Shown here: in pieces, positions 3,252 through 36,069 of the stretch
How positions within the stretch are numbered: the stretch's first letter is position 1
How the letters are laid out: every line of letters starts with the position of its first letter
Assembly (NCBI GenBank): GCA_002269645.1
Contig: NIVC01001883.1
Span: forward strand, 133,378 to 197,377
Reading direction: 5' to 3'
Length of the DNA stretch: 64,000 nt
Source of the DNA: Macrostomum lignano
Taxonomy: Eukaryota
The notes under the pieces: generated by a model
Seen by the model: the letters and a program-made list of their open reading frames with translations, nothing else
Told to the model about the DNA's origin: nothing
Database searches by the model: none
Position numbers and translations under genes: made by a program

Positions 3252-36069
<32,818 letters not shown>

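What the first reader, a model, noticed from the sequence alone, without database searches (positions are those of the whole stretch)
17904..17927. 8-aa microexon at the position of vertebrate neurexin splice site 2
Seen: TTGAC branch-like motif, C-rich tract, ccgcag|TCC GAG GAC CAG CAG CGT CTG CAG|gtgaga. It is 24 nt, phase 0-0, in the intron between ..VERSWQK and IRVSFDD.. Known: vertebrate SS2 lies at the equivalent ..TRNLRQ|VTISVDG junction of LNS2, takes 8- or 15-aa inserts and modulates LNS2 ligand binding (e.g. dystroglycan). Inference: an invertebrate uses a same-length, unrelated-sequence microexon at this site, implying ancient or convergent SS2 splicing.
Basis: partly seen in the sequence, partly recalled or inferred. 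Interest (0 to 1): 0.75.

Follow-up and report, generated by a model that had tools for sequence, protein, structure and literature searches.

The report
Flatworm neurexin microexon at splice site 2
A 24-base mini-exon very probably sits in a flatworm (Macrostomum lignano) neurexin gene at exactly the spot where vertebrate neurexins are alternatively spliced, which suggests this splice site is much older than vertebrates; no RNA read has yet shown this particular exon in use.

Summary
At 17904-17927 lies TCCGAGGACCAGCAGCGTCTGCAG, flanked by ccaccgcag| and |gtgaga. It is in frame and stop-free, in the phase-0 intron between ..VERSWQK (exon end 17460) and IRVSFDD.. (exon start 19120).

The window is Macrostomum lignano scaffold NIVC01001883.1. 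The gene is an alpha-neurexin, collinear with bovine NRXN1-alpha (E=6e-66). The junction aligns residue for residue with vertebrate SS2 (RNLRQ|VTISVDG).

No transcript model covers this junction, because the GenBank models start inside the intron at 19060. The indirect evidence is strong:
- The 47-51%-identical paralogue has an 18-nt microexon (DKQEIL) in the same intron, included in one RNA-seq-derived model and skipped in another.
- That microexon aligns in register with the candidate (11 of 18 bases, shared GAC start and GTGAG donor).
- A splice-site scan that recovers the paralogue exon finds almost no comparable decoys in about 219 kb of opposite-strand sequence.
- Seven of the eight codons end in G or C, as in the gene's exons.

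Oyster, insect, barnacle and ascidian neurexins also carry 9-10-aa inserts at this junction, so the site looks old.

Verdict: a probable real cassette microexon (about 0.7), a new member of a known kind, of moderate interest. Junction reads or RT-PCR would decide it.

The parts
17904..17927 (+). Candidate cassette microexon, 24 nt, phase 0-0, encoding SEDQQRLQ. Equals NIVC01001883.1:151281-151304.
   Evidence: Sequence. Splice-site scores 8.5 and 10.9. Identical in the second gene copy, L002 8440-8463. Aligns in register with the paralogue's transcript-supported microexon. GC3 is 7 of 8.
17910..17927 (+). The 18-nt core (DQQRLQ), positionally homologous to the paralogue microexon DKQEIL. It could be used through the weak acceptor tccgag| at 17908-17909.
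   Evidence: MAFFT alignment: GACCAGCAGCGTCTGCAG against GACAAGCAGGAGATTCTG, 11 of 18, with an AG directly before GAC in both. The acceptor scores only 2.5 against 8.5 for the 17903 AG.
17873..17877 (+). Branch-point-like TTGAC. The A at 17876 lies 28 nt upstream of the exon.
   Evidence: Read from the sequence. A consensus match only, not tested.
17882..17903 (+). C-rich polypyrimidine tract and CAG acceptor (gctcccaacctccccaccgcag).
   Evidence: PWM 3'ss score 8.5, within the 8.0-11.8 range of the gene's real acceptors.
17928..17933 (+). Donor site: CAG|gtgaga.
   Evidence: PWM 5'ss score 10.9, higher than every real donor of exons 1-5 (7.0-10.0). Only 3-4 sites on the + strand of the whole window score as high.
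17285..17460 (+). Exon 3, middle of LNS2. Ends ..[11 protein letters not shown] in phase 0.
   Evidence: Aligned to NRXN1-alpha LNS2.
19120..19278 (+). Exon 4, LNS2 continued. Starts IRVSFDD.., ends ..FFVGCMRE in phase 0.
   Evidence: Present in the GenBank models P0121 and P0271.
17461..19119 (+). The SS2-equivalent intron (1659 nt), holding the microexon and a tandem repeat at about 18270-18460.
   Evidence: Compared with the second gene copy: about 1.4% substitutions. The longest substitution-free stretch, 17718-18037, contains the microexon.
16540..16692 (+). Exon 2, start of LNS2 ([23 protein letters not shown]). Not in any annotated model.
   Evidence: No gene is called there in L004.
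3252..4035 (+). Exon 1: start codon, signal peptide, LNS1 and EGF-A. Not annotated.
   Evidence: and the alignment.
22025..22886 (+). Exon 5: end of LNS2, all of LNS3, and EGF-B.
   Evidence: Used as the query. 99% match to P0271.

Best explanation
The 24-nt segment is a genuine cassette microexon of a Macrostomum lignano alpha-neurexin gene (GenBank locus BOX15_Mlig022686g1).

Steps shown directly. The segment lies in a phase-0 intron that interrupts LNS2 at the position of vertebrate splice site 2. It has a branch-like motif, a C-rich tract, a CAG acceptor and a strong CAG|GTGAGA donor.

Steps inferred. The spliceosome can define the segment as an exon. Inclusion would add SEDQQRLQ, and skipping would join SWQK directly to IRVSFDD. 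By homology with solved NRXN1 LNS2 structures, the insert would fall in the surface loop at the start of strand beta-9, next to the ligand- and Ca2+-binding rim. Inclusion would therefore tune which extracellular partner LNS2 binds.

The exon is the counterpart of the 18-nt microexon (DKQEIL) in the paralogous neurexin gene. RNA-seq-derived models show that one both included and skipped. The microexon therefore probably predates the duplication that produced the two flatworm neurexins.
For: 1. Anatomy and coordinates are exact.
2. The gene is an alpha-neurexin. The spliced exons 1-5 hit NRXN1-alpha at E=6e-66, collinear over LNS1-EGF-LNS2-LNS3-EGF. SWQK|IRVSFDD aligns with NLRQ|VTISVDG, and the vertebrate insert sits exactly there (P0002; PMC6856630).
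3. The paralogue gives the strongest support. P0273 (PAA54791.1) reads ..VKRNYEK-DKQEIL-VNVIFDD.., while P0122 (PAA86589.1) reads ..VKRNYEK-VNVIFDD... The 18-nt exon is present in both genomic copies with aag|..|gtgagt (L003 33336-33353, L001 22572-22589). The GenBank annotation of this assembly is built only from RNA-seq and transcript assemblies (PMC5730564).
4. MAFFT aligns the candidate and the paralogue exon in register, with a shared GAC start, 11 of 18 bases and a shared GTGAG donor. An unbiased local alignment of the two whole introns (1.7 kb against 5.6 kb) ranks this pairing third, scoring 13 against 14 for the best.
5. The same splice-site scan recovers the paralogue exon with near-identical scores (8.9/10.6 against 8.5/10.9) and finds almost no pure decoys.
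6. The segment keeps the frame, has no stop, and uses the gene's preferred codons in 7 of 8 positions.
7. It is identical in the second gene copy and lies inside the longest substitution-free stretch of the intron.
Against: - No transcript, gene model or junction read shows this 24-mer in mRNA. Both public models of this gene start in the intron at 19060, and exons 1-3 are unannotated.
- The two gene copies differ by only about 1.4%, so perfect conservation of 24 nt has little weight. The paralogue's two copies show no conserved island around their exon.
- The similarity between the two microexons (11 of 18 nt, 2 of 6 residues identical) is too short to be significant alone, and part of the alignment score comes from splice consensus.
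- The paralogue's inclusion and skipping forms come from different gene copies and different transcript types, so alternative use within a single gene is inferred.
- The scan thresholds were set after seeing the candidate.
- There is no UGC motif within 60 nt upstream of the acceptor (sequence). From memory, such motifs are typical of SRRM-dependent neural microexons.
Confidence: 0.7

Rival explanations
1. It is a chance pseudo-exon: a good acceptor and a good donor that happen to lie 24 nt apart in a GC-rich intron and are never joined into mRNA.
For: No transcript evidence exists for this locus. Introns hold many cryptic sites: at looser thresholds (6 and 6) the + strand of the window has 33 such pairs. 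Conservation between the gene copies has little power.
Against: At thresholds matching the gene's real sites, pure decoys are about 1 per 200 kb. The segment also keeps the frame, lacks stops and has exon-like GC3. It sits in the one intron where the paralogue has a proven microexon and aligns with that exon in register.
Confidence: 0.15
2. It is a relic: once a working microexon shared with the paralogue, it is now silent in this gene, or conversely is always included, so there is no regulated alternative splicing here.
For: The homology with the paralogue exon says nothing about present use. The first 6 nt and the acceptor differ from the paralogue. The 5' part of this gene is so weakly represented in RNA-seq that it was not assembled.
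Against: Both splice sites are intact and strong, and the frame and codon bias are kept. That would not be expected for long after loss of use. Exons 1-3 are intact with good splice sites.
Confidence: 0.1
3. The exon is real but 18 nt long (17910-17927, DQQRLQ), using the AG that is positionally homologous to the paralogue's acceptor rather than the CAG at 17901-17903.
For: The register of the alignment. An AG directly precedes GAC in both genes, and the length would then equal the paralogue's 18 nt.
Against: The GAG acceptor scores 2.5 against 8.5. The upstream CAG is the first AG after the pyrimidine tract and would normally be chosen (general knowledge of 3' splice-site selection, from memory).
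Confidence: 0.1

Closest known systems
Vertebrate neurexin splice site 2 (SS2A insert HSGIGHAM, 8 aa; SS2AB, 15 aa) in LNS2 of Nrxn1-3 alpha
   Same: Same protein family, same domain (LNS2) and same residue-level position (after ..R-x-x-x-[QK], before [VI]-x-[IV]-S-[VF]-D-[DG]). Both introns are phase 0. The 24-nt reading gives the same 8-aa length. Both are cassette-type short exons (PMC6856630).
   Different: No sequence similarity between the inserts. There is no second 7-aa extension here. The vertebrate ligand whose binding SS2A strengthens, neurexophilin, is absent from invertebrates (PMC6856630), so any regulated partner must be another one. Use of the exon is not yet shown at this locus.
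The 18-nt microexon DKQEIL of the paralogous M. lignano neurexin (PAA54791.1, BOX15_Mlig001379g23; skipped in PAA86589.1)
   Same: Same species, same intron and same phase. Similar splice-site strengths (8.9/10.6 against 8.5/10.9). Both start with GAC and end before GTGAG, with 11 of 18 bases shared and a D-x-Q-x-[IL] pattern.
   Different: 18 nt against 24 nt. The acceptor is AAG, not CAG. The paralogue has a tandem second donor 9 nt downstream, which the window lacks. The paralogue exon has transcript support; the window's has none.
Inserts at the same junction in other invertebrate neurexins: Magallana gigas X7 LTVGNAKYI (absent from P0129), Drosophila grimshawi, Schistocerca and Exocentrus IS[SA][GI]TSFCR, Pollicipes LVDSGHSVCY, Phallusia KGDAVGPSST
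   Same: Same junction of LNS2 in the alignment. In the oyster both plus and minus forms exist.
   Different: These are 9-10 aa and resemble one another more than they resemble the flatworm inserts. In insects all the isoforms I saw carry the insert, so it may be constitutive there. I did not examine their genomic exons.
The SRRM3/4 (eMIC)-dependent neural microexon programme of bilaterians
   Same: A very short, frame-preserving exon in a neuronal adhesion gene, placed in a surface loop.
   Different: Nothing here tests regulation. No UGC motif lies within 60 nt of the acceptor in either paralogue (sequence). The comparison rests on my memory of that literature.

Membership tests
alpha-neurexin gene | Signal peptide followed by LNS-EGF-LNS repeats, collinear with NRXN1-alpha, plus a transmembrane segment and a C-terminal PDZ-binding tail | tested here: met
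   Exons 1-5 hit 3qcw_A at E=6e-66 and are collinear over chain residues 123-655. The rest of the gene matches P0271, which ends ..[10 protein letters not shown] like other neurexins. Best non-flatworm relatives are annotated neurexins.
neurexin splice site 2 (SS2) | The insert lies in LNS2 | tested here: met
   The domain follows EGF-A and precedes LNS3-EGF-B. Its best match within NRXN1-alpha is LNS2.
neurexin splice site 2 (SS2) | The insert lies between ..RNLRQ and VTISVDG.. at a phase-0 exon junction | tested here: met
   HMMER alignments and the MAFFT alignment place SWQK|IRVSFDD on NLRQ|VTISVDG. P0002 carries the 15-aa insert there. The genomic read-through ORFs P0036 and P0051 start the exon at VTISVDG, in frame.
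neurexin splice site 2 (SS2) | The short exon is alternatively included or skipped in mRNA | not testable with these tools
   No transcript covers the exon 3-4 junction of this gene. In the paralogue, one transcript-derived model includes an 18-nt exon and another skips it.
neurexin splice site 2 (SS2) | The insert sequence is related to HSGIGHAM (vertebrate SS2A) | tested here: not met
   SEDQQRLQ and DKQEIL show no similarity to HSGIGHAM or to the arthropod and mollusc inserts. Membership by position holds; common descent of the insert itself is not shown.
neurexin splice site 2 (SS2) | The insert changes ligand binding of LNS2 (dystroglycan, neurexophilin) | not testable with these tools
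   Known for vertebrates only (PMC6856630; PMC10084454). Neurexophilins are absent from invertebrates.
spliceosomal cassette microexon | AG acceptor with a pyrimidine tract, GT donor, length of 51 nt or less that keeps the frame, and no stop codon | tested here: met
   with scores. The same scan recovers the transcript-supported paralogue microexon.
SRRM3/4-dependent neural microexon | UGC-containing enhancer close upstream of the acceptor, and neural-specific inclusion | tested here: inconclusive
   No TGC lies within 60 nt upstream. The nearest is about 65 nt upstream in both paralogues. Tissue specificity cannot be tested here.

The most novel reading that the evidence does not exclude
A skippable microexon at the SS2 loop of LNS2 is an ancestral bilaterian feature of alpha-neurexins. 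It has been kept in both flatworm paralogues, in molluscs, arthropods and tunicates, and elaborated in vertebrates. A neurexin 'splice code' at this site would then predate vertebrates and neurexophilins, and would originally have tuned binding of an older LNS2 ligand such as dystroglycan.
Probability: 0.35. Interest if true: 0.65.

Novelty: new member of a known kind. Interest (0 to 1): 0.5.

Why it matters
Reviews still state that extensive neurexin alternative splicing is exclusive to vertebrates (PMC12665717, citing Tabuchi and Sudhof 2002). A used, skippable microexon at the SS2 position in a flatworm would move the origin of at least this site back to early bilaterians. The matching inserts already present in oyster, insect, barnacle and ascidian sequence records point the same way.

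It would also separate SS2 from its best-understood vertebrate role, tuning neurexophilin binding, because invertebrates lack neurexophilins. That points to an older regulated partner of LNS2.

M. lignano is transgenic-tractable (PMC5730564), so the question could be tested directly.

On the practical side, the finding exposes an annotation gap. Exons 1-3 and the microexon of this gene are missing from the public gene models.

Tried and rejected
- The search for homologous proteins with the window's LNS2 plus the microexon found nothing. The tool appears to list only proteins up to about 1.75 times the query length, so the result says nothing. A later profile search gave only 5 hits, but these included P0122, which was usable for a locus look-up.
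- An exact look-up of the exon-1 ORF product found nothing.
The single-exon query window:22025-22885 worked.
- Conservation between the two copies of the gene and between the two copies of the paralogue has too little divergence (1-2%) to show constraint.
- The shared TCCGAGGAC at the start of both exon 3 and the microexon looked like a duplication. A local alignment of the two acceptor regions is not clearly above controls: 9% of shuffles and 5% of acceptor-like controls reach the score. I dropped it as evidence.
- The 18-nt pair at 33140-33157 from the scan is not a second microexon. Its donor is the true donor of the EGF-C exon and its 'acceptor' is an AG inside that exon.
- Literature searches for invertebrate SS2 splicing found no paper that describes it. 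The honeybee study reports mostly whole-exon events.

Full report
**Observation.** The sequence at 17860-17935 reads ctctcagcgaacTTTGACcagcgctcccaacctccccaccgcag|TCCGAGGACCAGCAGCGTCTGCAG|gtgagaac. The 24-mer occupies exactly 17904-17927, translates to SEDQQRLQ and has no stop codon. The upstream exon ends at 17460 (..VERSWQK, phase 0). The downstream exon starts at 19120 (IRVSFDD..) and ends at 19278. The 24-mer occurs once in the window, even allowing three mismatches.

**What gene this is.** ORF inspection and phmmer seeding plus splice-site reading give five 5' exons on the + strand:
- 3252-4035: start codon, signal peptide, LNS1 and EGF-A.
- 16540-16692, 17285-17460 and 19120-19278: LNS2.
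- 22025-22886: end of LNS2, LNS3 and EGF-B.

Their spliced product hits bovine neurexin-1-alpha (3qcw) at E=6e-66. One collinear alignment runs from query 162-710 to chain 123-655. In that alignment, and..[11 protein letters not shown]|irvsfddhv.. lies on ..hdvkvtrnlrq|vtisvdgil.. without a gap.

The vertebrate fragment P0002 carries HSGIGHAMVNKLHCS between RNLRQ and VTISVDG. Genomic read-through ORFs (P0036, P0051) begin that exon in frame at VTISVDG. So the vertebrate SS2 junction is also phase 0 and is the same residue position. PMC6856630 describes SS2A as the 8 residues 379-386 (HSGIGHAM) and SS2AB as 7 residues longer. The HAM part extends strand beta-9, and the rest forms a solvent-exposed loop.

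**Which organism.** An exhaustive HMMER search with exon 5 found P0121. Cluster look-up then named PAA53330.1 and PAA62984.1 of Macrostomum lignano. The locus of PAA62984.1 (L004, NIVC01001883.1) is 100% identical to the window over 3 kb. The window coordinate equals the L004 coordinate plus 9059, which puts the microexon at record positions 151281-151304. A second copy of the gene (L002, NIVC01003103.1) is 96-97% identical by BLAST. That fits the known partial genome duplication of the sequenced DV1 line (PMC5730564).

**No direct transcript evidence at this locus.** Both GenBank models of this gene begin [20 protein letters not shown]|IRVSFDD.., which is inside the intron, 60 nt upstream of exon 4. 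No gene is called over exons 2-3. They are 5'-partial transcript fragments and say nothing about the exon 3-4 junction.

**The paralogue.** M. lignano has a second neurexin, 47-51% identical to this one. Two of its models differ at exactly this junction:
- PAA86589.1 (P0122) reads ..WHRLLVKRNYEK|VNVIFDD...
- PAA54791.1 (P0273) reads ..WHRLLVKRNYEK-DKQEIL-VNVIFDD...

In the genomic loci the six residues are a separate 18-nt exon with canonical sites, lying in the phase-0 intron between the homologous exons:
- L003 33336-33353: ..cccctccccattcgctcaag|GACAAGCAGGAGATTCTG|gtgagtctg..
- L001 22572-22589: the same, with one A/C difference giving DKKEIL.

The GenBank annotation of this assembly was made only from RNA-seq (STAR, StringTie, TACO), a de novo transcriptome and TransDecoder (PMC5730564). 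An 18-nt exon in a model therefore reflects spliced reads, and the skipped form reflects another transcript. One caveat: the two forms are annotated on different gene copies, and P0122 is a different transcript type with its own N-terminal signal sequence.

**Homology of the two microexons.** MAFFT aligns the window and the paralogue in register..TCCGAG|GACCAGCAGCGTCTGCAG|GTGAG against ..GCTCAAG|GACAAGCAGGAGATTCTG|GTGAG. That is 11 of 18 bases, with D-Q-Q-R-L-Q against D-K-Q-E-I-L.

A blind Smith-Waterman comparison of the complete introns (1659 against 5590 nt) ranks the microexon-to-microexon pairing third (score 13; the best two score 14). The score alone is not significant, and part of it comes from splice consensus. 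Landing on those two 40-nt spots by chance is nevertheless unlikely.

Relative to the paralogue, the window exon is extended by 6 nt at its 5' end through a stronger CAG acceptor. The AG that matches the paralogue's acceptor is kept (17908-17909) but scores only 2.5.

**Chance expectation.** I used a simple consensus PWM with thresholds at the weakest real sites of this gene (3'ss at least 8.0, 5'ss at least 7.0).
- The window's + strand has three acceptor/donor pairs 3-51 nt apart. One is the candidate. One uses the true acceptor of exon 4. One uses the true donor of the EGF-C exon.
- The - strand has none.
- The same scan on L001, L002 and L003 recovers the paralogue microexon (8.9/10.6) and a real 39-nt exon. 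It also lists a few further pairs on the + strands that I did not resolve.
- It finds one pair in all the - strands, about 219 kb with some duplication.

This suggests 0.01-0.04 expected decoys for a 1.66-kb intron, before requiring a kept frame and no stop. The thresholds were chosen after seeing the candidate, so the figures are rough. Codon bias is a separate line of support. GC3 is 0.88 in exons 1-5 and 7 of 8 in the microexon, and only 8% of stop-free 24-mers in this intron reach that.

**Conservation between copies.** The 221 nt around the microexon are identical in L002. The longest substitution-free stretch of the intron (17718-18037) contains it. Divergence is only about 1.4%, however, and exons are no better conserved than introns. 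The paralogue's two copies show no conserved island around their exon. This test has little power.

**Wider context.** I aligned the LNS2 regions of neurexins returned (names in 54, sequences in 61). Several carry inserts at the same junction:
- Magallana gigas isoform X7, LTVGNAKYI. The near-identical P0129 lacks it.
- Drosophila grimshawi X1 and X2, Schistocerca X4 and X5, and a beetle, IS[SA][GI]TSFCR.
- The barnacle Pollicipes, LVDSGHSVCY.
- The ascidian Phallusia, KGDAVGPSST.

The hemichordate, echinoderm and Clavelina isoforms I saw lack an insert. The junction is therefore a recurrent insertion point across bilaterians. Whether these inserts share an origin is open, since the flatworm inserts resemble none of them. 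A 2025 review still says extensive neurexin splicing appears exclusive to vertebrates (PMC12665717). My searches found no paper describing SS2-type splicing in invertebrates.

**Mechanism.** Shown: the position, frame, splice signals and homology described above. Inferred: exon definition by the strong donor and C-rich acceptor; a choice between inclusion and skipping; and, from the vertebrate structures, an 8-residue (or 6-residue) polar insert at the start of beta-9, beside the binding rim of LNS2, which would alter partner binding. Regulation is unknown. No UGC motif lies near the acceptor.

**Verdict.** The segment is probably a real cassette microexon (about 0.7), positionally equivalent to vertebrate SS2 and homologous to a transcript-supported exon in the paralogue. 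It is a new member of a known kind, of moderate interest. Junction reads or RT-PCR would settle it.

Noticed in passing
window 3252-17460 and 19060: The public gene models of this neurexin (PAA62984.1, PAA53330.1) are 5'-partial. They start inside the intron 60 nt upstream of exon 4. Exons 1-3 (signal peptide, LNS1, EGF-A and the first two thirds of LNS2) are intact but unannotated.
   Followed up: partly
window 25372-25527: A 52-nt unit is repeated three times in tandem at 96% identity. It contains the last 32 nt of an LNS4 exon (..[11 protein letters not shown]), its GTGAGT donor and 14 nt of intron. That gives three identical donors 52 nt apart, close to the position of vertebrate splice site 3. 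Using the second or third donor would shift the frame.
   Followed up: partly
L003 33354-33362 and L001 22590-22598: The paralogue microexon has a second good donor 9 nt downstream (CTG|GTGAGTCTG|GTGAGC). It would give a 27-nt exon (DKQEILVSL), an arrangement reminiscent of the two-step vertebrate SS2A/SS2AB.
   Followed up: no
L001 23803-23808 and L003 34297-34302: A 6-nt segment (TGTCAG) with strong acceptor and donor scores (11.2 and 8.6) lies in the same SS2-equivalent intron of the paralogue, about 1 kb downstream of its microexon. It could be a decoy or a second tiny exon.
   Followed up: no
window 17285-17310 compared with 17904-17927: Exon 3 and the microexon both begin with TCCGAGGAC (SED) directly after their acceptors and share CAGCG a little further on. 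Local alignment is only marginally above controls (5-9%), so duplication of the acceptor region is possible but unproven.
   Followed up: yes
window 22025-22036: Exon 5 starts GCGCGACTGCAG|TCG. A second in-frame CAG acceptor 12 nt downstream could remove ARLQ. The annotated models use the upstream site.
   Followed up: no
window 39004-42783: An open reading frame of 1260 aa holds reverse transcriptase, RNase H and integrase domains (Ty3/gypsy-type LTR retrotransposon pol), just downstream of the neurexin gene.
   Followed up: partly
window 57070-61242 (and 52339-54453, 61227-62312): A single 1391-aa ORF has URGCP-like and GTPase domains (E=4e-113). The two neighbouring long ORFs have no Pfam match.
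   Followed up: partly
L001-L004, downstream of each neurexin gene; in the window, from about 44125 on the - strand: Both neurexin paralogues, in all four loci, are followed by a 280-aa phosphatidylinositol-transfer-protein gene (PF02121) on the opposite strand. This conserved neighbourhood suggests the paralogues arose by a segmental or whole-genome duplication.
   Followed up: no
P0122 (PAA86589.1), locus L001: The paralogue model that skips the microexon begins with its own signal-peptide-like exon (MRRRAASEIAAAALLLCASVAAVTN), spliced straight onto the start of LNS2. It ends by read-through in LNS4. This may be an alternative-promoter, truncated isoform that lacks LNS1 and EGF-A.
   Followed up: no
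window 5600-16500, 18270-18460, 19290-19400 and 21230-22000: The introns are packed with long tandem and simple repeats, which create long spurious ORFs. This fits the published repeat content of this genome.
   Followed up: no
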